64,000 nt of DNA from Macrostomum lignano. Its lineage: Eukaryota. The stretch spans positions 62,001-126,000 of the forward strand of contig NIVC01001661.1 of the NCBI GenBank assembly GCA_002269645.1. The letters are read 5' to 3'. Below, piece by piece: positions 27,092 to 56,514 of the stretch; positions within the stretch are counted from its first letter, which is position 1, and every line of letters starts with the position of its first letter. The notes below the pieces were generated by a model. The model was not told the DNA's origin. It ran no database searches and was given only the letters and a program-made list of their open reading frames with translations. A program made the position numbers and the translations under genes.

Positions 27092-27102
27092 CTAAAAAGC
27101 AA

Positions 27103-36459: not shown

Positions 36460-36495
36460 GCGAAGAAGGCCCTGCCCAGTTGATAGAATTAGTTT

Positions 36496-37478: not shown

Positions 37479-37642
37479 AACAAAGACGGTATCTGACTGT
37501 TTTTACCTGTAGAGTATTCTGCCTCCCTCAAAAATCCGTAAAAAAGGTTAACATACTACTTATACATTTTTATTCAGTAGTAAGACAAGTAGCATGTATA
37601 AAATTAAGTACTGAATCACAAGTATATTCTAGTCAGCCAACC

Positions 37643-38660: not shown

Positions 38661-38910
38661 ATCCAATTGGCCTATTGTTCAATAGCCCAATTAATCAGAG
38701 TCCTCACCGGAGGTGATGTACTCATCTAAAAATAACCCTTTCTTTCAAAATAGATTTTTCGGCCCTCGGCCTTGGTTTAGGGGGGGGGGGTGTACCTGGA
38801 GTGAGTTGGAATTCTGGACTACAGTATGGCTAGAACAGGACTTGAGCCCCCTGGTCGCATCCGCCCTGCAGGAAAGACGACCATTCACAAAAGTGTACGG
38901 TAGAGCCCAG

Positions 38911-39870
38911 TTATGCCAGCCCCGAGGCTGAGCCCCTGAGGTTGTGTGATCCTCCCCAGCTTTATCTCCCCATGTTTTAGCCCTTGGTTTTATCTTGTCA
39001 CTGGAGCCACCCAAAATTCGGAGTTGAAGGTCTCGCCTCGGTGAGCGCGCTCCACAGCCTCGGTCCACCTGCTGTCTCTTCTGGAAGTTCCCTGCCTTTG
39101 TGTCTTGGCTCTCATCTCTGACAGTGGACTAGAGTCCCGGGGAAGAGTTCGTCCGGCTGAGTCCGGGTTCCTCTTGCTCCTTGTGCCCCTCTCCAACCCC
39201 TTGGCCTGGCCTTTATACTGAGCTGGATAGCGAAAAAGCCTTGAGGCTCGCAGCCCTATAGGTAGTTTTGGTCACCTGCCTGATAGGAGACTCGCCCATC
39301 GCAATAATCTTCCCGACTCGCTCCAATAGATAAGCCTTTTCCGTAGACTAGGATATTTCCTCTCTCGGACCGCTTAAGCATTCTCCAATTGTTTAGAGCT
39401 GGTTAGTGAAAAAGCCTTGAGGCTCGCAGCCCCATAGGAGGAGCTTTGTGCAATTCGGCCTTCTGATAGGAGACTCGCCCTTGGTAAATAAGCTGCCCAG
39501 ATTCGCTCCAATCTAAAGCCTTTTCCGTAGACTTCGGGGTTTTCCCCACTCTCAGACCGCTTTTCCAAAATTTGGGAAAATTTTTGCGCGCACACTTGGG
39601 TTTTGTCGTTGGGGGGGGGGGATGGCTTGAGTGGACTCGGTCCTAGCACCGTCCCTGATTCCACTATGGGTTGGCGGTGTCTTAGTCCATAGGCTTGGGC
39701 TAGTAGCACCAATTAAGATGTTTTTCCAGGCCATGAGTCCTGGTCTCAACCTGGGCCGCTCGGGCTTTATGCCCCTGGTAGATAGGCCCCTGTAATCCAG
39801 CGGCAGAGCCCCTCCCCGGGCTGATTCGCGGGCAGCACACAGCACTGCTTCCTACCCTCGTTTCACAACA
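38911..39870. repeat. ~1-kb dispersed repeat, copy 2
   Basis: Colinear with 36496-37478; abuts the ORF end of the subfamily C element. Confidence 0.85.
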
Positions 39871-42690
39871 AGCTTGGAGACTGCGGGCGACCAGCCGAAG
39901 GCATAGGAAGGTCGGGTGCGTAAGAAAGTTTGCGGTGCACCCGTACAGTGCTCTCACCCACGTATTGCGGCTCCAGTGGATGCAATGGAGCGCAAGCTGA
40001 CGCTGAAGGCTGCGGATGACGCTCTCGGCGAGCCCGACAGCACGCAGGATAGTGTTGTTGTGCGGTGACAAAGAGCCAAGCGCACGACACACACCCTCCA
40101 AGAAGGGACTCCCACTGACATGAGCAACCAGTCAGAGCCCCGGGGGCCCCTGGACTCAGGCCTTAAATGGGAACGACCAATGGTCCGCACAAGCACAGAC
40201 CTTCCGAAGATACGCCGCCCGCCCAGCCAGACAACCTCGTTCGTGTCCTGCGCCTCCGCGGCCAGCGGGGAAGACAAGGACATCACAAGACACAGACGCG
40301 GCAAATGTAAGGGCCGTAGGTGTGTCTGCGGCAAGCGTAATTCTCGAGATGGCGCGGTATTTTCGCGAGTAGGTAGCCGGGCCGGTCTCCGTGTTTTGAC
40401 TTCGATCAGCATGTGCCGTCTTCGGGCCGGGTCATCCATGCTGATTTTGGGACGTAGGCCAGAGCCAGCAGCACATCTTGGTCGCTGAGCAACGTCGCAG
40501 TCGCGCACGCCTTTTGAATGGCGCCCGCGATCGCGCTGACGACGCCGACGTGGTGATCCCTCCGTGGTGCACACGACAGGCGCCAAGGACGTGGCCGAGA
40601 GTCTCCGACTCCGTGCCGCATCGCCTGCAGCGGGCGTCGGCTGTCGGGTCAGCAAGCCGCCGCATCGCATTTTTCGGAATGAGGTTGAGGCGGGTTCGTT
40701 GTACAAAGCGCCAATCACATACGCGCATCCCGGTGCTATTGAACAGCCAAGTGTGTCGGTCGATGTGCATCACCGTCGTCGCGAAGCAGCCCTTGGAGCG
40801 GCATTGGCGCCATGCGGCCGTGTGCGCCGATCGGACAACCTCGTGCAGCTTGCACGTAGCCGCGCTGATCCGGTGGAGCTGCTCGACCGCCCCAGACAGC
40901 GGGTGCCGCCACTCCAAACGCAGAGTCCAGTTTTGTTCGATGGGGAGCTTCAGGTCGAGCGGCTGCAGGACCTCTCGGACAGCGTGGCGCACTTGAAACC
41001 ACCAGATGGATGTCTCACCGCTTGGTGGTAGCGTCGCGCCATTCAGGAAGTCGGTGACGTCACGGTAGCTCGGTCGAGGCAATGTCGCGCAGTATCTCGT
41101 CGCTGCCTTCTGGATGGCGGCTTCCTCTTTGAGCAGCGGCAGCCCAAGGCCACCATGGAGCTTGTCGGCGTAAAGGTAGTCGACCGTCGACTCCGCTGAC
41201 AGGTAGGCGACGCGCCGGATGATCTGGCGTGCCCTCTCGTCATAGCCCTACTCCACGCGCTGTCGGCCTTGCAACTTGCGTCGCTGGTTGCCCAGCAGCG
41301 TCCAGTCGGCGTCGCGTAGCCTGAGATGAAAAGGCAGGCGGGAGACCACAAAGGTGCGGTAAGCGTTCAGCTTTTGCCATTGCAGGAGGTCACAGTTCGC
41401 CACCGCTGTGAGCTCTCGGAGCGCCCGCTCGAGTAAGGCGCCAACAGACGCAGAACGTCGTTCACCTGCCGGGACGCCCAGGTACTCGTAAGTCTCGTCC
41501 TCGGTAAGGTTCCGGATGGGGCCCGCAGCGACCTGTAGATCCGCCTCCTCGGCCGGGCCGCCGTTGATGGTAACGCGGCCGCACTTGCCCGGGTTGATGG
41601 TGAGGCCTGCCCAGTCTGCTGCCTTGTCAACCGCCGCGACCACGCGCCGAAGAGCGGCCCCGCTGCTCGTGACGAACGCCGCGTCATCAGCGTACGCAAG
41701 GCTGAGCTGATGGTGTCCATGCAGTAGGTAGCCGTCGACAGGATCCGGCGCACGAAGGAGGGGCTCCATGCATAACGCGAAAAGGACTCCCGAGAGGGGG
41801 CAGCCCTGGCGCACTCCGCTTTCAACCGGAATATCGGGGGTGACGCGGTCTTCGCCGGCATGTATAGCGGTCACGTTCTCCGCGGAAATGTCCCAAAAGA
41901 GCGCTAAGGTGTCTCCGTCCATTTCCGCCCGCTCCAGGGATCCAAATAGCAGGTCGTGAGGCACACTGGTGAAGGCGTCACGGAGGTCTAGGAAGGCAGC
42001 GTCCAGCGTCACCTTGCGGCGTCATGCGTCGTCGCGGCAGGCGCGCAGCACGTAGTTGTGGTCGGCGAAACCTTCATAGTGGAGGCCTCCGCGCTGCCTC
42101 GGGCTGATGAGCTCCGCCAAAGTCGCCCATTGTAGAACACGCTCGATTAGAACCGCCGCAAAGATTTTATTGATGGTGTCCAGCAGAGTTATTGGGCGCC
42201 ATTTGGATAGGTCAGATTCCTGCCCGGCCTCATACCTGTCCGGCTTTTTGAATAGTAACACCGTGCGGTACCGTTTTCAGGTTGACATCTGCTGGAGTAA
42301 TTGGCTCCGCCGTAAAGGTGTCGCGGCAAGCAGGAGCGGGCCGGTGGGCGGTCGGGCAGTCTTGTAGCCCACGATCTGCATAGCGTTGTCGAAAGTCGGT
42401 GTCGATGTCCGCAATGGGCACAGCGCATTCAATGCGCAATGTTCCGCATCGCGCGCTTTCGATTTTTTTGCGTAGCGAGCCGCCAGACTGGTATTGGGAG
42501 AACCACACCGTCCGTGAGGCCCTCCACAACCGCGGCGCTCATCCGGGACAGCGGTGGCAACGAGGGAGTCGCAGGCCGTGCAAAACTCAGGCCATGCTCG
42601 CTCGTCGTCCTCAGGCAGGTCGTTGAGGGCAGCGCAGCAGAGTTCGGCTGGCGTCAAGCCGGCTGCCGACGACTCATCAAAGCCGACGAC
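39871..42690 (-). mobile_element. Utopia-like RLE non-LTR retrotransposon, diverged subfamily C, frameshifted and 5'-truncated
   Basis: Fragmented ORFs with WRPITLLD, DLRDAF, GVRQGCPLSG, YADD, CRRCG..ETLGHV and IEVK motifs. Confidence 0.9.
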
Positions 42691-42699
42691 GAACCAAAT

Positions 42700-43006
42700 C
42701 TTGTAGCTCCGTCCAGGCAATGTCGCGCAAGATCTCATCGCTGCCTCCAAGACGCTTTAGCGCCTCGACAACCTTCTGAATGGCGGCTTCTTCTTTAAGC
42801 AGGGGCAGTCCGAGACCACTGTGACGCTTGTCGGCGTAAAGGTAGTCAATCGTCGACTCTGCTGGCAGGTGGCAGGTGGGCCCTCTCATCAAAGCCCAGC
42901 TCCGCACGCTGCCGTTCTTGCAACTTGCACCGCTGATTGCCCAGTAGCGTTCAATCGGCGTCGCGTAGTCTGAGATGGAAGGGCAGGCAGGAGACAACAA
43001 GTTAAA
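42700..43006 (-). mobile_element. Internal Utopia-like fragment (post-RT region)
   Basis: STIDYLYADKRHSGLGLPLLKEEAAIQKV..., fused to a subfamily A 3' UTR. Confidence 0.8.
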
Positions 43007-45322
43007 CAAAATGCAGAGTGGAAGATAAGTAAAAGAGGTAAAAGTAAAGGTAACAGGGTGGGCTGAGATGAGCAGAGTTTGGCAGAGTTCGGCACAAAAT
43101 CAGTGGATTTGAGGTGCGCCGGTGCAGTGCTCCACCCACGTGTTGCGGCTCCAGTGGATGCAGTGCAGCGCCAGTCGTCGCTGGAGGTGCCGGATGTCGC
43201 GCTCGCGCAGGCCTGCAGCGCGCAGGATGGCGTTGTTGAAGGGCGACCAGGCGCCCAGCGAGCCGATGCAGAAAGTGGCCAGGGCCGTTGGTGCCTCTGC
43301 GCTGAGCTGCTGCGTGATGCCGGCGTACTTCTGGCATACGGCTCGGTGCTTGCGTGGGAACGTGGCCGGCCCGACCTCGAACGGCGACTTGACTTCGATC
43401 AGGAGGCGGCGGCCTCTGTCTGGATCCATGATGCTGATGTCAGGTCGCAGTTCAGAGCCGGGAAGGACCTCCTGGTCGGTGGTGATGGTCGCGTTTGGAC
43501 GGGCCTCGCTGATGGCGGTGGCGACGGCGTTGACGATGCCGTCGTGGCGGTCTCTCTACCTGGCCGCGTGCACCGGGCAGCTGTTGATGACGTGGCCGAG
43601 CGTCTCGAAGCCGGCTCCGCAGCGGCGGCATCGCGGGTCGGATGTCGGGTCGGCCAGTCTCCGGAGTGCGTTGGTGGGCACCAGGTTGAGCCGCGCTCGG
43701 TGGATGAAGCGCCAGTCGCAGGCGCGCATGCCGGTGCTGCTGAACAGCCAGGTGTGGCTGCCGATGTGCGTGGCAGTCGTGGCGAATCGGCCTTGGGAGT
43801 GGCACCCGCGCCAGGCCGCCGTGTGCGCTGCCCTGACCGCCTGGTGAAGCCTCCGGGTGATTGCTGCCGCTCTGTCGCATCGCTGGATAGTTCCGGACAG
43901 CGGGTCGCGCCACTCCAGGCTGGCCGTCCAGTCGTTGCTGATGGTGAAGCGCAGCCCGGTCGCGTGGAGCACTTCGCGGGTGGCGTGGCGGACTTGGAAC
44001 CACCAGCTGGCCGTTTCTCCGCTGGGTGGCAGTGCTGCGCCATTGAGGAAGTCGGCGACGTCGCGAGGTCAAACAGGTGCAGCCCGGAGCCGTAGGCGGC
44101 GTTGGACCAGGCCGCGCAGTTCGGCCCAGGCTAGCTCTCTGAGCGCGGTTTCGGTGACCTTCTGGACGGCTGCCTCCTCCTTCGCTAGGGACAGGCCAAG
44201 GCCGCGGTGGCATCTGTCGGCGTAGAGGTAGTCTGTCGACGACCGCGTCGGAAGGTAGACGATGCGGTGGAGGATTTGACGTGCGCGCTCGTCGTAGCCC
44301 AGCTCCGCTCTCTGATGGCCTTGCAGTTTGCGCCTTGGGTTGCCGAGCTTCGTCCAGTCGGCGTCGCGCAGGCGGAGGTGGAATGGCAGGCGCGACGCAA
44401 TGAAGGTGTTGTAGGCGTCGAGCTTCTGCCACGGTAGCAGGTCGCTGTTCGCCACGGCCGTCAGGTCGTTGAGCGCGCGTTCCAGCAGCGCCGCCACAGA
44501 TGCAGAGCGGCGTTTGCCAGCCGGCACGCCCAGGTACTCGTAGAATTCGTCCTCTGCGAGCGCCCGGATCGCGCCTGCCTGTACGCGCAGCTGGAAGTCC
44601 TCCCCGTGCCCGCCGTTGATGGTGGGGCGGCCACACTTGTCGGGGTTGATCTCTAGGCCGGCCCAGGCTGCAGCGCGGTCGATCGCTGTCACCCTGCGCT
44701 GCAGGGCCTCGCCGCCGTTGGTTAGGAGCGCAGCGTCGTCCGCGTAGGCAAGGCTGAGTTGCCTGTGCCCAGGAGGTTGTAGCCGTCGGCCTGGTTTGGC
44801 GCACGCAGTAGCGGCTCCATGCAGAGGGCGAACAGCACTCCGGACAGCGGGCAACCTTGCCGAACACCGCTCTCAACGGGGATGTCGGCAGTCGCCTGAT
44901 CAGGGCCGGTGTACACCGCAGTAACGTTGTCGGCGTAGATGTCTTGGATGAGGGCCTGTGTGACTGCGTCTAGGCTGCCTCGCTCGAGCTGGCCGAACAT
45001 GAGGTCATGCAGGACGCTTGTGAAGGCGTCGCGGAGGTCCACGAAGGCGGCGTCGAGGACGGCTTTGCGGCGGCGCGCGTCGTCGCGGCAAGCTCTCAGA
45101 ACATAATTGTGGTCGGCGCAGCCTTCGTACTGGAGTCCGCCACGTTGTTCTGGGCTGATCAGGTCGGCGTCGGACGCCCACCGCGTGACCCGCTCCGCCA
45201 GGATGGCTGCCAGGATCTTGTAGCACGTGTCCAGCAGGGTGATGGGCCGCCATTTGGACAGGTCGGATTCTTGGCCGGCGATGTACCGGTCCGGCTTCTT
45301 GAACAGCAGGATGGTGCGGTAT
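43007..45322 (-). mobile_element. Utopia-like subfamily A copy, truncated at both ends
   Basis: RT through RLE (LRPDI..IEVK) with frameshifts; near-identical to the corresponding part of 45590-49840. Confidence 0.92.
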
Positions 45323-45437
45323 TCTAAGGTATTCTACCTTCTTCCTACCACCCAAAGGACCACTGTACATAGCTATGTACATGTACACTACTACTTGATA
45401 CTACTATGGCTCCGCCTTCAATATTTTAGATATCTTA

Positions 45438-45589
45438 GATGCGCAGATCCTTGCTGTACTGCAGCGCAAGGCCTACGCGTGGACCAGGTCGTGTGAACAC
45501 GAAGCACTGGTCCGACTCATCAAAAACCGGATTAATTACTTAGTAGACCAATGGCCTACGTTAGAGGAATTAATCTCTAAAGAACAGAT
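45438..45589 (-). ncRNA. U2: U2 snRNA 3' half (target site downstream of the element), with 110-nt 3' flank at 45328-45437
   Basis: Begins ATCTGTTCTT; folds as stems IIa, IIb, III and IV, with loop IV GCTGCAGTACA. Confidence 0.9.
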
Positions 45590-46001
45590 CGAAAGGCCCT
45601 GCCCGTCGGCCGAGTATCCGACGGTCGGGCAATATATTTAAGCATTTAAACGATGCGATATAAGCGGAAATATTTGGCCAAGAGCCGATGATGCTACTGA
45701 AAGTAGCTAAAAACGGGTTCGCAGGATGCGTAAAACAGTAAAACATTGGAGTAAATGCAATTAAAACAGTGGGAAAAAGTGAAGGCGCAGGAGACGGGAT
45801 GGCGGCGGGGATAAGCGCGAGAGGCGGAATCGCAGCGAAAAATGCTTACAGAGTGCGTGTACTACGAGATAGTAAAAAGTAAAATATTAAAGAAAAACAA
45901 AGTAAAACAAAAATGCAGAGTGGAAGATAAATAAAAGAGGTAAAAGTAAAGGTAACAGGGTGGGCTGAGATGAGCAGAGTTTGGCAGAGTTCGGCACAAA
46001 A

Positions 46002-49000
46002 TCAGTGGATTTGAGGTGCGCCGGTGCAGTGCTCCACCCACGTGTTGCGGCTCCAGTGGATGCAGTGCAGCGCCAGTCGTCGTTGGAGGTGCCGGATGTC
46101 GCGCTCGCGCAGGCCTGCAGCGCGCAGGATGGCGTTGTTGAAGGGCGACCAGGCGCCCAGCGAGCCGATGCAGAACGTGGCCAGGGCCGTTGGCGCCTCT
46201 GCGCTGAGCTGCTGCGTGATGCCGGCGTACTTCTGGCATACGGCTCGGTGCTTGCGTGGGAACGTGGCCGGCCCGACCTCGAACGGCGACTTGACTTCGA
46301 TCAGGAGACGGCGGCCTCTGTCTGGATCCATGATGCTGATGTCAGGTCGCAGATCAGAGCCGGGAAGGACCTCCTGGTCGGTGGTGATGGTCGCGTTTGG
46401 GCGGGCCTCGCTGATAGCGGTGGCGACGGCGTTGACGATGCCGTCGTGGCGGTCTCTCCACCTGGCCGCGTGCACCGGGCAGCTGTTGATCACGTGGCCG
46501 AGCGTCTCAACGCCGGCTCCGCAGCGGCGGCATCGCGGGTCGGATGTCGGTTCGGCCAGTCTCCGGAGTGCGTTGGTGGGCACCAGGTTGAGCCGCGCTC
46601 GGTGGATGAAGCGCCAGTCGCAGGCGCGCATGCCGGTGCTGCTGAACAGCCAGGTGTGGCTGCCGATGTGCGTGGCGGTCGTGGCGAATCGGCCTTGGGA
46701 GTGGCACCCGCGCCAGGCCGCCGTGTGCGCTGCCCTGACCGCCTGGTGAAGCCTCCGGGTGATTGCTGCCGCTCTGTCGCATCGCTGGATGTTTCCGGAC
46801 AGCGGGTCGCGCCACTCCAGGCTGGCCGTCCAGTCGTTGCTGATGGTGAAGCGCAGCCCGGTCGCATGGAGCACTTTGCGGGTGGCGTGGCGGACTTGGA
46901 ACCACCAGCTGGCCGTTTCTCCGCTGGGTGGGAGTGCTGCGCCATTGAGGAAATCGGCGACGTCGCGAGGTCGGACAGGTGCAGCGCGGAGCCGTAGGCG
47001 GCGTTGGACCAGGCCGCGCAGTTCGGCCCAGGCTAGCTCTCTGAGCGCGGCGTCTGTGCAGCAGAGTCGCCTGACGGCCTCGGTGACCTTCTGGACGGCT
47101 GCCTCCTCCTTCGCTAGGGACAGGCCAAGGCCGCGGTGGCATCTGTCGGCGTAGAGGTAGTCTGTCGAGGACTGCGTCGGAAGGTAGACGATGCGGCGGA
47201 GGATTTGACGTGCGCGCTCGTCGTAGCCCAGCTCCGCTCTCTGATGCCCTTGCAGTTTGCGCCTTGGGTTGCCGAGCTTCGTCCAGTCGGCGTCGCGCAG
47301 GCGGAGGTGGAATGGCAGGCGCGACGCAATGAAGGTTTGTAGGCGTCGAGCTTCTGCCACGGTAGCAGGTCGCTGTTCGCCACGGCCGTCAGGTCGTTGA
47401 GCGCGCGTTCCAGCAGCGCCGCCACAGATGCAGAGCGGCGTTCGCCGGCCGGCACGCCCAGGTACTCGTAGAATTCGTCCTCTGCGAGCGCCCGGATCGC
47501 GCCTGCCTGTACGCGCAGCTGGAAGTCCTCCCCGGGCCCGCCGTTGATGGTGAGGCGGCCACACTTGTCGGGGTTGATCTCAAGTCGGCCCAGGCTGCAG
47601 CGCGGTCGATCGCTGTCACCCTGCGCTGCAGGGCCTCGCCGCTGTTGGCTAAGAGCGCAGCGTCGTCGGCGTAGGCGAGGCTGAGTTGCCTGCTGTGCCC
47701 CAGGAGGTTGTAGCCGTCAGCCTGGTTTGGCGCACGCAGTAGCGGCTCCATGCAGAGGGCGAACAGCACTCCGGACAGCGGGCACCCTTGCCGGACACCG
47801 CTCTCGACGGGGATGTCGGCAGTCGCCTGATCAGGGCCGGTGTACACCGCAGTGACGTTGTCGGCGTAGATGTCCTCGATGAGGGCCTGCGTGACTGCGT
47901 CCAGGCCGCCTCGCTCGAGCTGGCCGAACAGGAGGTCATGCGGGACGCTTGTGAAGGCGTCGCGGAGGTCCACGAAGGCGGCGTCGAGGACGGCTTTGCG
48001 GCGGCGCGCGTCGTCGCGGCATGCTCTCAGGACGTAGTTGTAGTCGGCGCAGCCTTCGTACTGGAGTCCGCCCCGTTGTCCTGGGCTGATCAGGTCGGCG
48101 TCGGACGCCCACCGCGTGACCCGCTCCGCCAGGATGGCTGCCAGGATCTTGTAGCACGTGTCCAGCAGGGTGATGGGCCGCCATTTGGACAGGTCGGATT
48201 CTTGGCCGGCGATGTACCGGTCCGGCTTCTTGAACAGCAGGATGGTGCGGTAGCTCTTCCAGCTGGGCGGGACGCGGTGGAATCGGCGCAGGCAGAGGTC
48301 GAAGATTGCGGCCAGTGCTTGTCCGGACGGGTCGGCCTTGGTCAGGTCGGAGTACCGTAGGCCGTCGTTGCCGGGCGCAGAGTCCGTCCGACCCTTGAGG
48401 GCGCGCCGTACGTCCGCTGCCGTTATCGGTTCCGCTGTGCTGAGGTCTGCGGTGGTCGCCTTTGGGATGTATGCCGCATCACTGTCCCAGTCGCGGGGTC
48501 CTCTGTCGGCGTACCTCCGGCGAAAGTCGGCTTCGACGTCAGCGAGGGGGACCGCGCATTCGACTCGGGCTTCGCCTAGGGTCTCGCGCATGGCTTCGCG
48601 ACGGTTTCTCGCGTACCGTGCGGCAAGGTTGTCGTTGTGCCTTGGTCCGCCCCTCCCTCTGCGGTTGTTCTCGGGCTGTGCGGCGATGATGAAGCTGTCG
48701 CAGGCGGTGCAGAACTCTGGCCAGGCTGTTGCGTCGTCCTCTGGTAGGTTGGCGATCGCTTGGAGGCATGCTGCCGCCGCGGCTGTGGTTGGTGCTTCTG
48801 GAGCCAAAGCCGCGGGTGCTGCTGGAGCCGCGGTTGCCGCTGGAGCCGCCGCCGATGCTGCTGCCGCCGGTGCTGCTGCTGTCGCCGCTGCCGCTGCCGC
48901 CGGTGCTGCTGCCGCCGGAGCTGCTGCTGTCGCCGCTGCCGCTGCCGCCGGTGCTGCTGCCGCCGCTGCTGCTGCTGTCGCCGCTGCTGCTTCTGCCGGT

Positions 49001-49733
49001 GCTGCTGCCGCCGGTGCTGCTGCTGTCGCCGTTGCCGCTGCCGCCGGTGCTGCTGCCGCCGGTGCTGCTGCTGTCGCCGCTGCCGCTGCCGCCGGTGCTG
49101 CTGCTGTCTCCACCACTGATGCTACTGGAGCCGCGGGAACTGCTGGTGCCGCCGACGTTACCACCGGAGCTGCTGGCGCCGCTACGGCTGCCGGTGCCGC
49201 TGGTTCGACTGCTGGTGCCGTGGCGCCCCGTCTCGTGGCGCAGAGGGCCGCGTGGCGTGCCCACCTAGCAGTGGAGAAAATCGTGTGGCAGTGCCGGCAT
49301 GCGACTGCGTTCTCCAGCTTGGCGTCAGTCCTTGGTCTGCACCTGGCGGCGTGGATGTTGCGGGCGCGTGCTGTGGCGAATTGTGCGCCGCATCTGTACG
49401 TGCACCGATGCCGCGCGTCCGTTGCTGCTTTTGCCTTGGCCGCAGCCTCGTAGTTACCGGCCGCGCGTTGCCTCTCTGCGCAGGTGTTTAAGTGCCGAGA
49501 CATGCCTTTGGCTGTCAGTGTCTTACGGCAGGCCGGGCAAACCTCCCTCGGCAGCGCTGCTCCAGACTGTCGTCTGCTGCTGGTAGCCGCTGCCTCAGTC
49601 GCTTGATTCGACGCTGTTGGGGTCGATCGAGGCTGCTGCCGCTGGGCGAGGTAGCCGAGTTCTTGCAGATGCCGGCATGGGCGTAAAGGTTGCGCTCGGA
49701 CCTAAATTGACGGCCGCACTTGCATGTGTACAT
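46002..49733 (-). CDS. Retrotransposon polyprotein (~1240 aa once three apparent 1-nt deletions are repaired): 4 CCHC fingers, Ala-rich linker, RT, CCHC knuckle, restriction-like endonuclease
   Basis: Motifs PGNDG, WRPITLLD, DLRDAFTSVPH, GVRQGCPLSG, LAYADD, YEYLG, CRRCG-ETLGHVINSC, RHD..RPDI..IEVK. Frame breaks near 49620 (inferred site), 47580 and 47340. Confidence 0.85.
48770..49220 (-). repeat. Coding gct/gcc-rich repeat giving a PAAAA-type Ala-rich linker
   Basis: Tandem gctgctgccgccggt-like units within the element ORF. Confidence 0.9.
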
Positions 49734-49840
49734 ATTCCGCCACTATAGTCGAGCAGTGGATCCAAAGGCCGAGACGGCGATGTTACTGTGAAGTGGAGCA
49801 CCCGAGGCGAAGCATGACGAGCCGAACCGAGCCGAGCCGA

Positions 49841-49865
49841 ACTACAGATCTTAGCCAATAAGGCC
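49841..49865 (-). ncRNA. U2: U2 5' fragment (nt 11-39 with AAAG deleted) at the 5' junction of the full-length element
   Basis: Minus strand GGCCTTATTGGCTAAGATC-TGTAGT versus the intact 5' half at 56476-56514. Confidence 0.85.
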
Positions 49866-50320
49866 TCTCGGACGGCGTGGCGCACTTGAAACCACTAGCT
49901 GGATGTCCCGCCGCTTGATGGTAGCGTCGCGCCATTCAGGAAGTCGGCGACGTCACGGTGTCGCACGGGGGCGGCGATTGTTAAAGCAATTTGAAGCAAA
50001 AAAGAAGGCGGGAGCGCATTTCAAAAAGATTTTAGAGGAAAAAGAATATCTGGGGATAAAAACGAGAGAGTAGAAGTAAGATAAGAGCGAAAACGAAAGG
50101 ATAGAATAGAAAAGTGAGTCGAAATGATTAAAAAGGTAAAGGAGGATGAAATAAATGATAAATAGATACATAAAATGTAAAATGTATAAGATGTAGACGG
50201 GTGAAAACAGGAGCAAAAGTCAAAGGGGAAGCAAATGGCAACGAGAGAGAAGGGCGCGTGGATACCGCGGGCGACCAGGCGAAGGCACAGGGAGGTCGGC
50301 CGCGTCAGTTTTGCATCTGA
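49866..50320 (-). mobile_element. Fused Utopia-like fragments (subfamily C-like ORF piece plus B/C-like 3' UTR)
   Basis: 49866-49958 resembles ~40970-41065; 49960-50310 resembles 52930-53250 and 39880-39920. Confidence 0.75.
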
Positions 50321-50434
50321 CGTCGGTATTCTACGTTCTTCCTACCACCCAAAGGACCACCGTACATAGCTATATACATGTACAGTACTCCTTGATACTG
50401 CCATGACTCCGCCTTCGCTATTTTAGATTTCTTA

Positions 50435-50585
50435 GATGCGCAGATCCTTGCTGTACTGCAGCGCAAGGCCTACGCGTGGACCAGGTCGTGTGAACACGAA
50501 GCACTGGTCCGACTCATCAAAAACAGGATTAATTACTTAGTAGACCAATGGCCTACGTTAGAGGAATTAATCTCTAAAGAACAGA
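50435..50585 (-). ncRNA. U2: U2 snRNA 3' half with 110-nt 3' flank (50325-50434)
   Basis: Same sequence as 45438-45589 apart from a substitution next to the Sm site and the missing junction A. Confidence 0.9.
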
Positions 50586-52158
50586 GCGAAAGGCCCTGCC
50601 CGTCGGCCGAGTATCCGACGGTCGGGCAATATATTTAAGTATTAAACACAATAAGCGATATAAGCAGAAATATTTGGCCAAGAGCCTGATGATGCTACTG
50701 AGAGTAGCTAAAAACGGGTTCGCAGGATGCGTAAAACAGTAAAACAATGAAATGCAATTAAAACAGTGGGGAAAAGTGATGGCGCAGGAGATGGGATGGC
50801 GGCAGGGATGAGCGCGAGAGGCGGAATCGCAGCGAAAATAGCTTACAGAGTGCGTGTACTACGAGATAGTAAAAAGTAAAATATTACAGAAAAACAAAGT
50901 AAAACAAAAATGCAGAGTGAAAGATGAATAAAACAGGTAAAGTCGTAAAGGTAACAGAGCGGACTGAGATGAGCAGAGTTTGGCAGAGTTCGGCACAAAA
51001 TCAGTGGATTTGAGGTGCGCCGGTGCAGTGCTCCACCCACGTGTTGCGGCTCCAGTGGATGCAGTGCAGCGCTAGTCGTCGTTGGAGGTGCCGGATGTCG
51101 CGCTCGCGCAGGCCTGCAGCGCGCAGGATGGCGTTGTTGAAGGGCGACCAGGCGCCCAGCGAGCCGATGCAGAAAGTCGCCAGGGCCGTTGGCGCCTCTG
51201 CGCTGAGCTGCTGCGTGATGCCGGCGTACTTCTGGCATACGGCTCGGTGCTTGCGTGGGAACGTGGCCGGCCCGACCTCGAACGGCGACTTGACTTCGAT
51301 CAGGAGACGGCGGCCTCTGTCTGGATCCATGATGCTGATGTCAGGTCGCAGATCAGAGCCGGGAAGGACCTCCTGGTCGGTGGTGATGGTCGCGTTTGGG
51401 CGGGCCTCGCTGATGGCGGTGGCGACGGCGTTGACGATGCCGTCGTGGCGGTCCCTCCACCTGGCCGCGTGCACCGGGCAGCTGTTGATCACGTGGCCGA
51501 GCGTCTCGACGCCGGCTCCGCAGCGGCGGCATCGCGGGTCGGATGTCGGGTCGGCCAGTCTCCGGAGCGCGTTGGTGGGCACCAGGTTGAGCCGCGCTCG
51601 GTGGATGAAGCGCCAGTCGTGGCGAATCGGCCTTGGGAGTGGCACCCGCGCCAGGCCGCCGTGTGCGCTGCCCTGACCACCTGGTGAAGCCTCCGGGTGA
51701 TTGCTGCCGCTCTGTCACAGCGCTGGATAGTTCTGGACAGCGGGTCGCGCCACTCCAGGCTGGCCGTCCAGTCGTTGCTGATGGTGAAGCGCAGCCCGGT
51801 CGCGTGGAGCACCTCGCGGGTGGCGTGGCGGACTTGGAACCACCAGCTGGCCGTTTCTCCGCTGGGTGGCAGTGCTGCGCCATTGAGGAAGTCGGCGACG
51901 TCGCGAGGTCAAACAGGTGCAGCCCGGAGCCGTAGGCGGCGTTGGACCAGGCCGCGCAGTTCGGCCCAGGCTAGCTCTCTGAGCGCGGCGTCGGTGCAGC
52001 AGAGTCGCCTGATGGCCTCGGTGACCTTCTGGACGGCTGCCTCCTCCTTCGCTAGGGACAGGCCAAGGCCGCCGTGGCATCTGTCGGCGTAGAGGTAGTC
52101 TGTCGAGGACTGCGTCGGAAGGTAGACGATGCGGCGGAGGATTTGACGTGCGCGCTCG
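50586..52158 (-). mobile_element. Utopia-like subfamily A, 5'-truncated, with a ~61-bp internal deletion near 51618
   Basis: Complete 3' UTR and RLE; the deletion is bounded by repeated cagtcg. Confidence 0.92.
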
Positions 52159-52614
52159 AAGTAGCTAAAAACGGGTTCGCAGGATGCGTAAAACAGTAAA
52201 ACATTGGAGTAAATGCAATTAAAACAGTGAGAAAAAGTGAAGGCGCAGGAGACGGGATGGCGGCGGGGATGAGCGCGAGAGGCGGAATCACAGCGAAAAA
52301 TGCTTACAGAGTGCATGAACTTCGAGACAGTAAAAAAGTAAAATATTAAAGAAAAACAAAGTAAAACAAAAATGCAGAGTGGAAGATAAATAAAACAGGT
52401 AAAAGTAAAGGTAACAGGGTGGGCCAGAGTTTGGCAAATGACAAATGCTCATGGCAAATGAGCAGAGTTTGGCAGAGTTCGGCACAAAATCAGTGGATTT
52501 GAGGTGCGCCGGTGCAGTGCTCCACCCACGTGTTGCGGCTCCAGTGGATGCAGTGCAGCGCCAGTCGTCGTTGGAGGTGCCGGATGTCGCGCTCGCGCAG
52601 GCCTGCAGCGCGCA
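52159..52614 (-). mobile_element. Short subfamily A fragment (ORF end plus partial 3' UTR)
   Basis: Matches ~45680-46110; carries a small extra insertion near 52430-52460. Confidence 0.85.
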
Positions 52615-52661
52615 CTCCTTGATACTGCCATGACTCCGCCTTCGCTATTTTAGATTTCTTA

Positions 52662-52812
52662 GATGCGCAGATCCTTGCTGTACTGCAGCGCAAGGCCTAC
52701 GCGTGGATCAGGTCGTGTGAACACGAAGCACTGGTCCGACTCATCAAAAACCGGATTAATTACTTAGTAGACCAATGGCCTACGTTAGAGGAATTAATCT
52801 CTAAAGAACAGA
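52662..52812 (-). ncRNA. U2: U2 snRNA 3' half with 48-nt flank
   Basis: Matches the other copies; one mismatch in stem III. Confidence 0.9.
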
Positions 52813-54140
52813 GCGAAAGGCCCTGCCCCTCGGACGAGCTACCGAGAGTGGGGGCAATATATTTAAGTATTAAAGGAAATTAGTAGGCGAGGACAGATGA
52901 TTGTAAAGGCGACGGCGAGCGAGGGCTCATGCAAAAGAAATAGAGCGGCGAAAGTTAAAGCAAATTGAGCAGAATAAAGCGTTTCAAAAGACTTTTAGAA
53001 GACAACGGGAAGCGGGATAAAAAGGGGAGTGGCAGTAAAAGCAGACGAAAACAAAAGGATGAAATAAAAAAGAAATAAAATAAAATAGACCAAAATGGAT
53101 AAAAAAAGGATGGGTGAGAGAGTATTAAATGCAAAATAGATAAATGAGATATAAAGGTGGTGAAAACAGGCGCGGACGTCCCAAAAGGAGCAACGGGCAA
53201 TAATTGGGGTCAGAAAGCGCGGAGACCCAAAACGGTCAGGCGAAGGCACAGGCACAGGTGCATCAGAAAGTTTGCGGGGCGCCCGTGCAGTGCTCCACCC
53301 ACGAATTGCGGCTCCAGTGGATGCAGTGGAGCGCAAGCTGGCGCTGGAGGCTGCGAATGACGCGCTCGGCGAGCCCGGCCGCACGCAGGATGGTGTTGTT
53401 GTGCGGCGACCAGGAGCCAAGCGCTCCGACACAAAGAGTCGCCAGGGCCGTAGGTGCGTCCTCCTTCAGCCGCTGGGTCAGGCCAGCGTATTTCTCGCAG
53501 ACGGCCCGGTGCTTACGCGAATAGGTAGTCGGGCCGGCCTCCATCGGTGTCTTGACTTCGATCAGCAGGCGCCGTCCTCGAGCCGGGTCCTCGACGCTGA
53601 TGTCGGGACGGAGGCCAGAACCAGGCAGCACCTCCTGATCGTTGAGCACCGTCGCAGTCGGACAGGCCTTCTGGATGGCACCGGCGATCGCGCTGACGAC
53701 GCCGTCGTGGCGGTCTCTCCATCGTCCCGCATGCACAGGGCAGGCGCTAAGGACATGACCGAGGGTCTCCGCCTCAGCGCCGCATCGCCTGCAGCGGGCG
53801 TCGGCTGTCGGGTCAGCGAGCCGCCGCGTCGCATTCGTTGGAATGAGGTTGAGGCGGGCGCGATGTACGAAGCGCCAGTCACACACGCGCATCCCGGTGC
53901 TGTTGAACAGCCAGGTGTGCCCGCCGATGTGTGTCGCCGTCGTCGCGAAGCGGCCCTGGGAGCGGCATTGCCGCCACGCCGATGTGTGCGCCGATCTGAC
54001 GACCTCGTGCAGCTTGCGCGTGGCCGCGCTGATCCGTTGGAGCTGCTCGACCGCCCCAGACAGCGGGTGCCGCCACTCCAGACGCACAGTCCAGTCCTGC
54101 TCAATGCGGAACTTCAGGTCGAGCGGTTGCAGCACTTCTC
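52813..54140 (-). mobile_element. Utopia-like subfamily B, 5'-truncated
   Basis: Distinct 3' UTR; ORF CRRCGAEAETLGHVLSAC..LRPDISVEDP..IEVKTP..HCTGAPQTF*; same U2 junction as subfamily A. Confidence 0.92.
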
Positions 54141-54160
54141 GAGCGGTCGAGCGGTTGCAG

Positions 54161-55249
54161 CGCCACTCCAGGCTGGCCGTCCAGTCGTTGCTGATGGTGA
54201 AGCGCAGCCCGGTCGCGTGGAGCACCTCGCGGGTGGCGTGGCGGACTTGGAACCACCAGCTGGCCGTTTCTCCGCTGGGTGGCAGTGCTGCGCCATTGAG
54301 GAAGTCGGCGACGTCGCGAGGTCAAACAGGTGCAGCCCGGAGCCGTAGGCGGCGTTGGACCAGGCCGCGCAGTTCGGCCCAGGCTAGCTCTCTGAGCGCG
54401 GCGTCGGTGCAGCAGAGTCGCCTGATGGCCTCGGTGACCTTCTGGACGGCTGCCTCCTCCTTCGCTAGGGACAGGCCAAGGCCGCCGTGGCATCTGTCGG
54501 CGTAGAGGTAGTCTGTCGAGGACTGCGTCGGAAGGTAGACGATGCGGCGGAGGATTTGACGTGCGCGCTCGAAGTAGCTAAAAACGGGTTCGCAGGATGC
54601 GTAAAACAGTAAAACATTGGAGTAAGCAATTAAAACAGTGAGAAAAAGTGAAGGCGCAGGAGACGGGATGGCGGCGGGGATGAGCGCGAGAGGCGGAATC
54701 ACAGCGAAAAATGCTTACAGAGTGCATGAACTTCGAGACAGTAAAAAAGTAAAATATTAAAGAAAAACAAAGTAAAACAAAAATGCAGAGTGGAAGATAA
54801 ATAAAACAGGTAAAAGTAAAGGTAACAGGGTGGGCCAGAGTTTGGCAAATGACAAATGCTCATGGCAAATGAGCAGAGTTTGGCAGAGTTCGGCACAAAA
54901 TCAGTGGATTTGAGGTGCGCCGGTGCAGTGCTCCACCCACGTGTTGCGGCTCCAGTGGATGCAGTGCAGCGCCAGTCGTCGTTGGAGGTGCCGGATGTCG
55001 CGCTCGCGCAGGCCTGCAGCGCGCACTCCTTGATACTGCCATGACTCCGCCTTCGCTATTTTAGATTTCTTAGATGCGCAGATCCTTGCTGTACTGCAGC
55101 GCAAGGCCTACGCGTGGATCAGGTCGTGTGAACACGAAGCACTGGTCCGACTCATCAAAAACCGGATTAATTACTTAGTAGACCAATGGCCTACGTTAGA
55201 GGAATTAATCTCTAAAGAACAGAGCGAAAGGCCCTGCCCCTCGGACGAG
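54161..55249. repeat. Near-identical duplicate of 51748-52838
   Basis: Same chimeric junctions and same private insertion; offset 2413 bp, then 2411 bp after a 2-nt indel. Confidence 0.92.
55073..55223 (-). ncRNA. U2: U2 snRNA 3' half (inside the duplicated block)
   Basis: Matches 52662-52812. Confidence 0.9.
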
Positions 55250-56472
55250 TATCCGACGGTCGGGCAATATATTTAAGTATTTAAACGATGCGATATAAGC
55301 GGAAATATTTGGCCAAGAGCCGATGATGCTACTGAGAGTAGCTAAAAACAGGTTCGCAGGATGCGTAAAACAGTAAAACAATGAAATAAATGCAATTAAA
55401 ACAGTGGGAAAAAGTGAAGGCGCAGGAGACGGGATGGTGGCAGGGATGAGCGCGAGAGGCGGAATCGCAGCGAGAATAGCTAACAGAGTGCATGAACTTC
55501 GAGACAGTAAAAAGTAAAATATTAAAGAAAAACAAAGTAAAACAAAAATGCAGAGTGAAAGATGAATAAAACAGGTAAAAGTAAAGGTAACAGGGTGGGC
55601 TGAGATGAGCAGAGTTTGGCAGAGTTCGGCACTAAATCAGTGGATTTGAGGTGCGCCGGTGCAGTGCTCCACCCACGTGTTGCGGCTCCAGTGGATGCAG
55701 TGCAGCGCCAGTCGTCGTTGGAGGTGCCGGATGTCGCGCTCGCGCAGGCCTGCAGCGCGCAGGATGGCGTTGTTGAAGGGCGACCAGGCACCCAGCGAGC
55801 CGATGCAGAAAGTCGCCAGGGCCGTTGGTGCCTCTGCGCTGAGCTGCTGCGTGATGCCGGCGTACTTCTGGCATACGGCTCGGTGCTTGCGTGGGAACGT
55901 GGCCGGCCCGACCTCGAACGGCGACTTGACTTCGATCAGGAGACGGCGGCCTCTGTCTGGATCCATGATGCTGATGTCAGGTCGCAGATCAGAGCCGGGA
56001 AGGACCTCCTGGTCGGTGGTGATGGTCGCGTTTGGGCGGGCCTCGCTGATGGCGGTGGCGACGGCGTTGACGATGCCGTCGTGGCGGTCCCTCCACCTGG
56101 CCGCGTGCACCGGGCAGCTGTTGATCACGTGGCCGAGCGTCTCGACGCCGGCTCCGCAGCGGCGGCATCGCGGGTCGGATGTCGGGTCGGCCAGTCTCCG
56201 GAGTGCGTTGGTGGGCACCAGGTTGAGCCGCGCTCGGTGGATGAAGCGCCAGTCGCAGGCGCGCATGCCGGTGCTGCTGAACAGCCAGGTGTGGCTGCCG
56301 ATGTGCGTGGCAGTCGTGGCGAATCGGCCCTGGGAGTGGCACCCGCGCCAGGCCGCCGTGTGCGCTGCCCTGACCACCTGGTGAAGCCTCCGGGTGATTG
56401 CTGCCGCTCTGTCACAGCGCTGGATAGTTCTGGACAGCGGGTCGCGCCACTCCAGGCTGGCCGTCCAGTCGT
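55224..56472 (-). mobile_element. Utopia-like subfamily A, 5'-truncated, directly joined to the U2 5' half
   Basis: 3' UTR plus knuckle/RLE ORF (55637-56377); three extra bases (ttg) separate it from U2 nt 39. Confidence 0.93.
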
Positions 56473-56475
56473 CAA

Positions 56476-56514
56476 ACTACACTTTGATCTTAGCCAATAA
56501 GGCCGAGAAGCGAT
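56476..56514 (-). ncRNA. U2: U2 snRNA 5' end (39 nt), with unique AT-rich upstream DNA
   Basis: ATCGCTTCTCGGCCTTATTGGCTAAGATCAAAGTGTAGT: the conserved metazoan U2 5' end including stem I and most of the GUAGUA branch-point recognition sequence. Confidence 0.96.

What the first reader, a model, noticed from the sequence alone, without database searches (positions are those of the whole stretch)
45318..50434. 3' transduction of U2 plus an identical 110-nt flank: a sign of read-through RNA and template jumping
Seen: two U2 3' halves carry a downstream flank that ends at the same point (ggtattctac at 45328 and 50325, both 110 nt from the U2 end). The two flanks differ at many positions and are fused to unrelated element fragments (the subfamily A RT region and a B/C-like ORF end). 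Known: R2-type RTs can jump from the 5' end of one template to the 3' end of another RNA. Inference: element-U2-flank transcripts with a defined 3' end were copied in series during integration, adding new U2 3' halves to the array.
Basis: partly seen in the sequence, partly recalled or inferred. Interest (0 to 1): 0.8.

Follow-up and report, generated by a model that had tools for sequence, protein, structure and literature searches.

The report
Utopia retrotransposons carrying U2 tails
A single U2 snRNA gene has been filled with about 20 kb of U2-specific Utopia retrotransposon copies, and some copies brought along the back part of a U2 gene plus about 106 bases of flank from another locus, which suggests the element is copied from a read-through RNA.

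Summary
Two U2 3' parts (minus strand, 45588->45434 and 50585->50431) are each followed by the same ~106-nt flank. Both flanks end at ...GTAGAATACC (45328, 50325). Each is then fused, through 6-10 nt of filler, to an unrelated 5'-truncated element piece.

The elements are Utopia, a known U2-specific non-LTR retrotransposon that inserts at U2 nt 38/39. The whole cluster (36.3-56.5 kb) sits inside one U2 gene. Its 5' part is at 56514->56476 and a decayed 3' part is at 36459, with a different flank.

The internal U2 3' parts and flanks are therefore imported:
- They show no similarity to the local flanks.
- They are contiguous with an element 3' end.
- The full-length copy also carries a U2 leader fragment (nt 13-39).
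- No promoter sequence and nothing beyond +106 is found next to any imported U2 part.

The A copies differ mostly at synonymous sites (dN/dS 0.07-0.30), so they are separate retrotransposition products rather than local DNA duplicates.

This supports 3' transduction from U2-Utopia co-transcripts. A fixed RNA 3' end is only suggested: two of three independent flank ends coincide. Template jumping cannot be separated from repeated priming at the retained upstream half of the target. I rate it a new variant of a known kind, of moderate interest.

The parts
56476..56514 (-). Native U2 snRNA 5' part (nt 1-39, ATCGCTTCTCGGCCTTATTGGCTAAGATCAAAGTGTAGT). It is the upstream edge of the whole cluster, with AT-rich native DNA beyond it.
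   Evidence: Read directly; pattern match.
55224..56472 (-). Subfamily A Utopia copy 'u4', 5'-truncated (equivalent to 46837 in the full copy), joined to U2 nt 39 through TTG.
   Evidence: Self-BLAST 55025-56472 vs 45390-46837, 96.7%; tblastn; junction.
55025..55223 (-). Imported U2 3' part (55223->55069) plus 44 nt of flank (55068->55025), fused to an A' fragment.
52813..55024 (-). A' fragment (ORF end and part of the 3'UTR), an A piece (47227->46801 equivalents), then a colinear switch at 54150/54141 into a C-type copy that runs to its 3' end.
   Evidence: (a continuous protein alignment A_C 112-518 crosses the A/C join).
52614..52812 (-). Imported U2 3' part (52812->52658) plus 44 nt of flank. 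Duplicate of the 55 kb copy (51739-52874 vs 54150-55285, 98.9%).
50586..52613 (-). A' fragment, then A copy 'u2', 5'-truncated at the 47227 equivalent, with a 57-nt deletion and one stop codon; its 3' end is intact.
50431..50585 (-). Imported U2 3' part (nt 39-end) following copy u2.
   Evidence: Rfam 82.6 bits.
50325..50430 (-). Flank copy 2 (106 nt), ending ...GTAGAATACC at 50325.
49977..50324 (-). Junction J2: 10-nt filler GACGTCAGAT (50324->50315), then fragment D, which is the stop-codon region and upstream 3'UTR of a B/C-like subfamily, truncated at both ends.
49866..49976 (-). About 110-nt internal ORF fragment of a B-like element (92% identical to 40967-41066).
49841..49865 (-). Internal U2 5' fragment (nt 13-39, GGCCTTATTGGCTAAGATC-TGTAGT, with a 4-nt deletion) directly upstream of the full-length copy. 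Read as the leader of a U2-promoter co-transcript.
45590..49840 (-). Full-length subfamily A Utopia copy 'u1' (~4.25 kb) with zinc-finger motifs, a Gly/Ser-rich repeat, RT, a CCHC motif and a PD..ExK endonuclease motif. The ORF is broken by a frameshift near 47.4-47.6 kb.
   Evidence: Pfam RVT_1, E=1.9e-22; translations; frames.
45434..45589 (-). Imported U2 3' part following the full-length copy (junction ...GGGCCTTTCG|ATCTGTTCTT).
   Evidence: Rfam 85.9 bits.
45328..45433 (-). Flank copy 1 (106 nt), ending ...GTAGAATACC at 45328.
45318..45327 (-). Junction J1: TTAGAATACC, a 9/10 tandem near-copy of the flank's last 10 nt. Its last 4 nt (TACC) are shared with the A RT sequence (microhomology).
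42996..45321 (-). A copy 'a0', 5'-truncated in the RT region (48252 equivalent) and ending inside the 3'UTR (45896 equivalent); two stop codons and a 27-nt deletion.
38908..43001 (-). A B-like ORF piece (43001->42701), then the older B subfamily copy (42639->38908; its ORF is ~45% identical to A in the C-terminal part and ~71% in the RT region), with a long 3'UTR that stops 14 nt short of its end.
36330..37470 (-). Copy E (3'UTR only), then the decayed U2 3' part 'u0' (36459->36330) with its own, different downstream flank. Probably the original 3' part of the resident U2 gene.

Best explanation
The interval lies inside a 20-kb pile-up of Utopia elements within one U2 snRNA gene. Utopia is a restriction-like-endonuclease non-LTR retrotransposon that inserts at U2 nt 38/39.

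The two U2 3' parts with the 106-nt flank are not resident genes. They are reverse-transcribed tails of donor RNAs made at another U2 locus. Such an RNA would have this order: U2 leader (from the U2 start site), Utopia subfamily A, U2 nt 39-end, then ~106 nt of that locus's flank.

At a normal target, the nicked DNA can pair with the U2 part of the RNA, and copying starts exactly at the element's end. Here the site keeps only the upstream U2 half, with old element DNA downstream. Copying therefore started at, or jumped to, the very 3' end of the read-through RNA, and the U2 tail and flank were carried in. This is 3' transduction.

I favour repeated, separate insertions at the retained U2 5' half-site. 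Each would push older copies downstream. Occasional template jumps would explain the short fragments between modules.

Shown: the anatomy, the foreign origin of the flank, and the retrotranspositional origin of the copies. Inferred: the co-transcript, its 3' end at about +106, and the way copying was primed.
For: 1. Family and site. The U2 pieces start at TCTGTTCTT (nt 39) right after an element 3' end, five times. This is the Utopia site described in PMC4640811. The ORF has an RT domain and CCHC and PD..ExK motifs. A ~30%-identical relative on another contig has the same U2 junction.
2. One gene. The U2 5' part lies at 56514->56476 next to native AT-rich DNA. The decayed U2 3' part at 36459 has a different flank.
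3. The flank is foreign. It has no similarity to either local flank; alignment scores equal those of shuffled sequence.
4. Element, U2 and flank form one homology block (96-97%).
5. The imported U2-related material stays within a transcription unit. It comprises a U2 leader of nt 13-39 before the full-length copy and a flank never longer than 106 nt. No promoter or longer flank accompanies any imported U2 part.
6. The copies are retrotransposition products. dN/dS is 0.07-0.30. Variable sites by codon position are 12/8/34, p=6e-4 even against a GC-weighted expectation. The u1-u2 ORF differs by 2.9%, the 3'UTR by 5.8% and the flank by 10.4%.
7. Flank variants track the element sublineages {u1, a0} and {u2, u4}.
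8. Same end twice, plus a tandem near-copy of the last 10 nt at J1.
9. Precedents.
- R2 RT needs no homology to start and can jump end to end; A-clade R2 binds only upstream of its site (PMC12203849).
- R1 arrays grow by re-insertion at the upstream target remnant (PMC2718515).
- About a fifth of Nasonia Utopia 3' ends abut another Utopia.
- From my own knowledge, not checked here: lengthening an snRNA gene weakens 3'-box processing (Ramamurthy et al. 1996).
Against: - Only two junctions define the +106 end. A third independent flank end is at +44.
- There is no poly(A), ribozyme, terminator-like fold or other end-forming signal at +106.
- No donor locus or native U2 gene with this flank could be examined.
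- Several fragments end at internal element positions (45896, 45701 and 52945 equivalents). Priming, or later deletion, was therefore often not at a defined RNA end.
- DNA-level duplication has acted in the cluster.
- A 1.43-kb segment (37475-38905) is unexplained.
- The very low divergence of the U2 3' parts (0.6-1.3%) needs an extra assumption.
Confidence: 0.6

Rival explanations
1. One or a few integration events in which the RT, on reaching the 5' end or a break of one template, jumped onto the exact 3' end of an element-U2-flank RNA and continued. Modules were thereby chained in a single cDNA.
For: - All pieces have the same orientation.
- The downstream partner at J1 and J2 is 5'-truncated and the upstream partner ends at the same nucleotide.
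- There is 4-nt microhomology at J1.
- Short internal fragments (about 110-450 nt) lie between modules, which look more like jump products than like insertions of their own.
- R2 RT jumps end to end without homology (PMC12203849).
- L1-U6 and tripartite chimeras show the same architecture (PMC4476161 and PMC2104539).
Against: - Many acceptor fragments start at internal positions, not at RNA 3' ends, so many broken RNAs would be needed.
- Private changes are highest in a0, the most downstream A copy (a0 12, u1 6, u2 6, u4 3). This fits staggered insertion, although the counts are small.
- The decayed u0 and the old B and E copies downstream also suggest insertions spread over time.
- Part of the chain is a DNA duplication.
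Confidence: 0.3
2. The locus was a native tandem array of U2 genes that shared this flank as spacer. Each gene was hit by Utopia, and each insertion deleted the rest of the spacer plus U2 nt 1-38, as proposed for Phytophthora arrays.
For: - In Phytophthora arrays the U2 nt 1-38 fragment expected upstream of each Utopia insertion is missing, and the authors interpret this as deletion of the U2 5' fragment upon integration.
- The model would explain well-conserved U2 3' parts (recently functional) next to diverged spacers.
Against: - No promoter or spacer sequence beyond +106 survives anywhere in the cluster.
- The two deletions would begin at exactly the same base but end at different ones (U2 nt 12 and nt 39).
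- The space between flank 2 and the internal U2 leader is filled by two 3'-truncated element fragments that are not at a target site.
- The terminal U2 3' part has an unrelated flank, and the sequence upstream of the first U2 is also unrelated to the flank.
- The two 5' junctions that retain U2 sequence, at the full-length copy and at the cluster's upstream edge, keep it through nt 39, so those insertions deleted nothing.
Confidence: 0.1
3. DNA-level events only. Segmental duplication, unequal exchange and deletions within the cluster copied an element-U2-flank block, and the shared end is a coincidence or a fragile site.
For: There is a clear 1.1-kb duplication at 98.9% identity (51739-52874 vs 54150-55285) and a colinear A/C hybrid join.
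Against: - The divergence between modules has a strong synonymous bias and is graded ORF < UTR < flank. That is not what decay after local duplication would give.
- The flank still has to be brought in from another locus.
- Homologous exchange does not create junctions at non-homologous points.
Confidence: 0.07
4. The flank end is a weak pseudo-target (CGTAGAATA resembles U2 GTGTAGTA) that Utopia cut twice, inserting truncated copies there.
For: - GTAG.AT is shared with the U2 site (direct reading).
- Crocodilian Utopia copies insert at short U2-like sequences.
Against: - Neither inserted piece has an intact 3' end.
- Neither is followed by the remainder of the flank.
- The motif is short and expected by chance (3 matches found, 3.1 expected).
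Confidence: 0.04

Closest known systems
Utopia (U2 snRNA gene-specific non-LTR retrotransposons, NeSL clade; Kojima & Jurka 2015, PMC4640811)
   Same: Same insertion point: U2 resumes at nt 39, TCTGTTCT. The ORF has N-terminal zinc fingers, RT, and a C-terminal CCHC motif plus a PD..ExK endonuclease motif. There is no poly(A). Insertion is clean with no target duplication, as in arthropod families. Several subfamilies occur together, and disrupted U2 parts outnumber intact ones. Tandem Utopia-Utopia junctions are reported in Nasonia.
   Different: Here successive elements are separated by an imported U2 3' part plus a short flank from another locus, and one copy has an internal U2 leader. The paper does not mention read-through RNA, transduction or template switching. 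It read similar Phytophthora arrays as native U2 arrays with deletions. The nearest database proteins are only ~30% identical.
LINE-1 3' transduction
   Same: Flanking DNA downstream of a donor element is copied with it through a read-through transcript and lands at a new locus.
   Different: There is no poly(A) signal or A-tail. The transduced piece is the rest of the target gene plus its flank. The element is site-specific, and the copies pile up at one site.
Template-jump chimeras: R2 RT end-to-end jumping in vitro; L1-U6 and multipartite chimeric retrocopies (PMC12203849, PMC4476161, PMC2104539)
   Same: The exact 3' end of one RNA is fused to a 5'-truncated copy of another in the same orientation, with little or no homology.
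   Different: Here the acceptor would be the element's own co-transcript rather than a cellular small RNA. A single-event origin is not shown. RNA ligation before reverse transcription (PMC6789731) is a further route that cannot be excluded.
Tandem R1 arrays in Drosophila 28S genes (Stage & Eickbush 2009, PMC2718515)
   Same: Arrays grow by new insertions at the target remnant upstream of an element already in place. R1 transcripts can carry short upstream target tags.
   Different: R1 units are separated by a 14-bp target duplication, not by a ~260-bp imported gene tail and flank. R1 uses an AP-type endonuclease.

Membership tests
Utopia | 3' end of the element abuts U2 at nt 38/39 (U2 resumes with TCTGTTCT) | tested here: met
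   Five junctions ...GGGCAGGGCCTT(C)TTCG(C/A)|TCTGTTCTTTAGAG, matching the site in PMC4640811.
Utopia | Single ORF with N-terminal zinc finger(s), RT, and a C-terminal zinc finger plus PD..(D/E)xK restriction-like endonuclease | tested here: met
   Pfam RVT_1 E=1.9e-22; zf-RVT weak, below cut-off. Motifs read in the translations: EVCPACRKTLTAKGMSRHLNTC; CRRCGAGVETLGHVINSC and RPDISIMD...LLIEVK. The endonuclease is identified by motif only, not by a profile hit.
Utopia | RT groups with Utopia families in a phylogeny | not tested
   No Repbase Utopia sequences were available. Indirect support: the relative P0002 (30% identity) on contig L001 is followed by U2 from nt 39.
Utopia | 5' junction with the U2 5' part (arthropod type: no duplication or deletion) | tested here: met
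   ...AAAGTGTAGT|TTG|A copy at 56476, and ...TGTAGT|TCGGCTCGG for the full-length copy, whose 3' side resumes with ATCTGTTC.
3' transduction (LINE-1 type) | Transduced segment is contiguous with the element's 3' end and shared between copies | tested here: met
   Unbroken 96-97% homology across element, U2 and flank in three modules.
3' transduction (LINE-1 type) | Segment is foreign to the insertion locus | tested here: met
   No similarity to sequence downstream of u0 or upstream of the native U2 5' part; scores are within the shuffle range.
3' transduction (LINE-1 type) | A donor locus exists in which the flank continues beyond the transduced end | not testable with these tools
   The organism is absent from the searchable collections.
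3' transduction (LINE-1 type) | Transduced segment ends in a poly(A) tail after a downstream poly(A) signal | tested here: not met
   No AATAAA and no A-run at either flank end. Utopia has no poly(A) tail anyway, so this is a difference of kind and not evidence against read-through.
Template-jump chimera | Acceptor copy ends at the true 3' end of its RNA | tested here: inconclusive
   Same end twice, plus a tandem near-copy of the last 10 nt. One other flank end is at +44, and there are no RNA data.
Template-jump chimera | Donor copy is 5'-truncated at the junction, in the same orientation, with short or no homology | tested here: met
   J1: RT region with 4-nt TACC overlap. J2: stop-codon region with 10-nt filler. 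All pieces are on the minus strand.
Template-jump chimera | The whole chimera arose in one integration event | not testable with these tools
   This needs empty or intermediate alleles, or orthologous loci. Singleton counts are too few to date the modules.
R1-type tandem array by upstream re-insertion | An intact upstream target half is retained at the 5' edge of the array | tested here: met
   U2 nt 1-39 at 56514->56476.

The most novel reading that the evidence does not exclude
The U2 3' part and its ~106-nt tail are not an occasional passenger. They would be a heritable, selected 3' module of subfamily A RNA. The Sm site and the terminal U2 stem-loops would give the element RNA an snRNP-like, protected 3' end, and the conserved last ~40 nt would specify where the RNA ends. 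The module would then be copied at every round.

The evidence for this is thin:
- The flank has diverged about as much as the element's neutral sites (10% vs dS 0.07 and UTR 5.8%) and tracks the element sublineages.
- The U2 part between them is almost invariant (0.6-1.3%).
- The flank's last 40 nt show 1 difference against 10 in the first 66.
Probability: 0.15. Interest if true: 0.75.

Novelty: new variant of a known kind. Interest (0 to 1): 0.5.

Why it matters
Utopia is the most widely distributed target-specific retrotransposon lineage, yet how it is transcribed and how its copying is primed are not known. This locus gives sequence-level evidence on three points:
- Its template appears to be a co-transcript driven from the U2 gene, with a U2 leader in front and a U2 tail and flank behind.
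- Copying can apparently start from the end of that read-through RNA.
- A target that keeps only its upstream half can seemingly be hit again and again.

If this is right, arrays of 'disrupted U2 genes', such as those counted in Phytophthora and Nasonia, may partly be cDNA copies rather than former genes. That would change estimates of how many U2 genes the element has destroyed. It also yields a concrete, testable RNA 3' end.

Tried and rejected
1. Trivial end of pairwise homology. I first suspected that the 348 nt after flank 2 was simply the native flank continuing. Sensitive BLAST showed it is a B/C-like 3'UTR and ORF end, so I rejected this.
2. A search for native U2 5' parts with the canonical sequence found none at up to 3 mismatches. 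Direct reading and a species-specific pattern then found two.
3. Finding the organism or sister loci led nowhere.
   - Two protein searches gave only ~30% relatives.
   - Exact scans of the metagenome and viral collections for the species-specific U2 stem gave 0 hits.
   - The bacterial/archaeal genome collection and the phage, plasmid and E. coli collections were not tried because they are irrelevant here.
4. End-forming signals. No consistent fold was found in the two flanks (z = +0.33 and -2.30, with different structures). There was no ribozyme or other Rfam hit at E<=1, and no poly(A) signal.
5. The pseudo-target idea for GTAGAATA was rejected because the motif is at chance frequency and no flank remainder follows the inserts.
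6. Dating modules by private substitutions did not work. The counts (12/6/6/3) are too small, and most are synonymous, so they predate insertion.
7. The related contig L001 confirmed the family's target site but has no imported U2 tails.


Full report
**What is at the coordinates**

Rfam finds four U2 snRNA matches on the minus strand: 45434-45614, 50431-50611, 52658-52838 and 55069-55249. The alignments show that only model positions ~38-192 are true U2. Each piece starts at (A/C)TCTGTTCTT, and the 26 nt upstream align poorly. A fifth, decayed piece starts at 36459.

Two pieces are followed by the same flank, 45433->45328 and 50430->50325. The two copies differ at 11 of 106 positions, and both end in GTAGAATACC.

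**Is the shared end trivial?**

Any two homologous sequences stop being homologous at the same point in both. The observation therefore only matters if both partners beyond that point are foreign.

- At J1 (45328) the flank is followed by TTAGAA and then TACCGCACCATCC. This is the RT region of subfamily A, equivalent to 48252 in the full-length copy.
- At J2 (50325) it is followed by GACGTCAGAT and then 338 nt that looked anonymous. A sensitive search shows these are the stop-codon region and upstream 3'UTR of a B/C-like element: 83% identical to 39872-39924 and 67% identical over 332 nt to 52945-53252, E=8e-27.

Both junctions are thus with element pieces that are unrelated to each other.

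**What the elements are**

The long copy (49840->45590) encodes an RT (Pfam RVT_1, E=1.9e-22). It also has zinc-finger motifs, a CCHC motif and a PD..ExK endonuclease motif. Every intact element 3' end abuts U2 at nt 39.

This is the definition of Utopia, whose 3' flank 'started at nucleotide 39' of U2 (PMC4640811). A ~30%-identical relative on an unrelated public contig has the same junction.

At least three subfamilies (A, B and C-like) are present, all on the minus strand. The full-length A copy has a frameshift near 47.4-47.6 kb.

**The wider anatomy changes the picture**

At the upstream edge of the cluster lies a clean U2 5' part. It reads ATCGCTTCTCGGCCTTATTGGCTAAGATCAAAGTGTAGT (56514->56476). 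AT-rich native DNA precedes it, and it is fused to a 5'-truncated A copy. At the other edge is the decayed U2 3' part, with a downstream flank unrelated to the 106-nt flank.

The whole 20 kb therefore sits inside one U2 gene. In sense order it reads:

1. U2 5' part
2. A copy (u4)
3. U2 3' part + 44-nt flank
4. A' fragment
5. A/C hybrid copy
6. U2 3' part + 44-nt flank
7. A' fragment
8. A copy (u2)
9. U2 3' part + 106-nt flank
10. Filler, fragment D, B fragment
11. U2 leader nt 13-39
12. Full-length A copy (u1)
13. U2 3' part + 106-nt flank
14. Filler
15. A copy (a0)
16. B piece, then B copy
17. 1.43 kb of unknown sequence
18. E copy (3'UTR only)
19. Decayed U2 3' part
20. Native flank

The two 44-nt junctions are one event, because they lie in a 1.1-kb duplication at 98.9% identity.

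**Evidence that the internal U2 tails came in through RNA**

1. The flank has no similarity to either native flank of this locus. It is also found only at the four known sites in the window.
2. Homology runs unbroken across element 3' end, U2 and flank.
3. The full-length copy is preceded by a U2 leader fragment (nt 13-39) and followed by U2 from nt 40. That is the content of a transcript starting at the U2 start site.
4. No promoter or spacer sequence, and nothing past +106, accompanies any imported U2 part. The exception in the cluster is the unexplained 1.43-kb segment far from the finding.
5. The A copies differ mainly at synonymous sites. dN/dS is 0.07-0.30, and variable sites by codon position are 12/8/34 (p=6e-4 against a GC-weighted expectation). 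Between u1 and u2 the ORF differs by 2.9%, the 3'UTR by 5.8% and the flank by 10.4%. Local DNA duplicates decaying in place would not show this pattern, so the modules descend from diverging active lineages.
6. The flank variant follows the element sublineage, {u1, a0} against {u2, u4}.

**How it most likely works**

A Utopia inside a U2 gene would be transcribed from the U2 promoter. From my own knowledge, not checked here, lengthening an snRNA gene weakens 3'-box processing (Ramamurthy et al. 1996), so read-through into the flank is expected.

At an intact target the nicked bottom strand can pair with the U2 tail of the RNA, and copying starts exactly at the element's end. R2 behaves this way with downstream 28S sequence, and R2 RT does not need homology to start (PMC12203849).

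At this locus the site keeps only the upstream U2 half. The primer is old element DNA that cannot pair with the RNA. Copying would therefore begin at the RNA's very end and import the U2 tail and flank.

Three observations make re-use of an upstream half-site plausible:
- A-clade R2 proteins bind only upstream of their site.
- R1 arrays grow by re-insertion at the upstream target remnant (PMC2718515).
- About a fifth of Nasonia Utopia 3' ends abut another Utopia.

**Template jumping versus serial insertion**

It explains the short internal fragments between modules better. It has good precedents in R2 in vitro and in L1-U6 and tripartite chimeras.

Against a single event:
- Old, decayed copies lie at the downstream end.
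- Private changes are highest in the most downstream A copy, a0 (12, against 6, 6 and 3). The counts are small.
- Part of the chain is a DNA duplication.

I cannot separate the two versions with this window.

**How firm is a defined RNA end at +106?**

In favour:
- Two independent junctions fall at the same base.
- J1 has a 9/10 tandem near-copy of the last 10 nt, which could be a re-start on the same RNA end or a templated filler from repair.
- The last 40 nt of the flank have 1 difference against 10 in the first 66 (p=0.05).

Against:
- A third flank end is at +44.
- Several fragments end at internal positions.
- No end-forming signal was found.

With about nine independent ends spread over ~1.5 kb, one exact coincidence has a rough probability of 0.02-0.1 (my estimate). 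This is suggestive, not proven.

**Rivals**

- A native tandem U2 array with deletions, which is the reading given to Phytophthora arrays. It fails on four points: no spacer or promoter remnants survive; the two deletions would start at the same base but end at different ones; 3'-truncated element fragments fill the space upstream of the internal U2 leader; and the terminal flanks are unrelated.
- DNA rearrangement alone does not explain the substitution pattern or the foreign flank.
- A pseudo-target at the flank end is not supported.

**Novelty**

The Utopia family, its site and its tandem copies are known. L1 3' transduction and RT template jumping are also known. What has not been described, as far as the Utopia paper and my searches show, is co-mobilisation of the target gene's 3' part and flank by a site-specific endonuclease-type element. 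It builds arrays of false 'disrupted U2 genes' inside one gene. That makes it a new variant of a known kind.

**Limits**

- The organism could not be identified.
- No native U2 locus with this flank could be inspected.
- The assembly could not be checked.

Noticed in passing
window 37475-38905: A 1.43-kb segment inside the cluster with no similarity to any element, U2 or flank. It has no long ORF and only a 51-nt direct repeat pair (37687-37790). It lies between the B copy, whose 3'UTR stops 14 nt short of its end, and the 3'UTR-only copy E. It could be another mobile element or sequence carried in with B.
   Followed up: partly
window 54141-54150: Colinear, in-frame switch from subfamily A to subfamily C sequence within one copy (the protein alignment runs through the join), with a small local duplication (TGCAACCGCTCGACC, twice). 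It is a recombinant element, made either by copy-choice during reverse transcription or by DNA exchange.
   Followed up: partly
window 51739-52874 and 54150-55285: A 1.1-kb tandem-type duplication at 98.9% identity spanning an A piece, an A' piece, the 44-nt flank, a U2 3' part and the end of a 3'UTR. It shows that DNA-level duplication also shapes the cluster.
   Followed up: yes
window 45434-45588, 50431-50585, 52658-52812, 55069-55223: The imported U2 3' parts differ from one another by only 0.6-1.3%, while the adjoining 3'UTR differs by 5.8% and the flank by 10% (p=0.005 and p=0.0003). Possible causes are constraint on the U2 tail in the element RNA, resetting from functional U2 genes, or gene conversion.
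   Followed up: partly
window 48800-49110: An internally repeated Gly/Ser-rich coding stretch (imperfect tandem repeats of ~48-54 nt) in the N-terminal part of the subfamily A ORF, between the zinc fingers and the RT.
   Followed up: no
window 49670-49740: The first zinc-finger-like motif of the full-length copy (MYTCKCGRQFRSERNLYAHAGIC) is in a different frame from the main ORF that begins near 49701. The copy therefore probably has a second frameshift near its 5' end.
   Followed up: no
window 677-1757, 3539-3958, 4724-5789, 7660-10407, 19221-21079, 21794-22438, 23451-25617, 25911-26335, 27090-27689, 61983-62484: The rest of the window is AT-rich (30-50% GC) and packed with at least ten different tandem-repeat arrays. 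The GC-rich (55-67%) Utopia cluster stands out sharply against this background.
   Followed up: no
L001 364-527, 12386-12574, 15473-15636: On the unrelated public contig that carries the ~30% relative, the Utopia-like ORF is followed by U2 from nt 39. Two complete U1 snRNA genes and several other RT-encoding ORFs lie within 12 kb, so this is an snRNA gene neighbourhood rich in retroelements.
   Followed up: partly
window 56476-56514 and 45569-45588: This organism's U2 has two extra bases in its first 39 nt (CTTATTGG, CAAAGT) and an unusual stem-loop IIa (TCTTTAGAGATTAATTCCTCTAA). An exact 23-nt pattern that includes the start of this stem-loop found nothing in the metagenome or viral collections.
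   Followed up: partly
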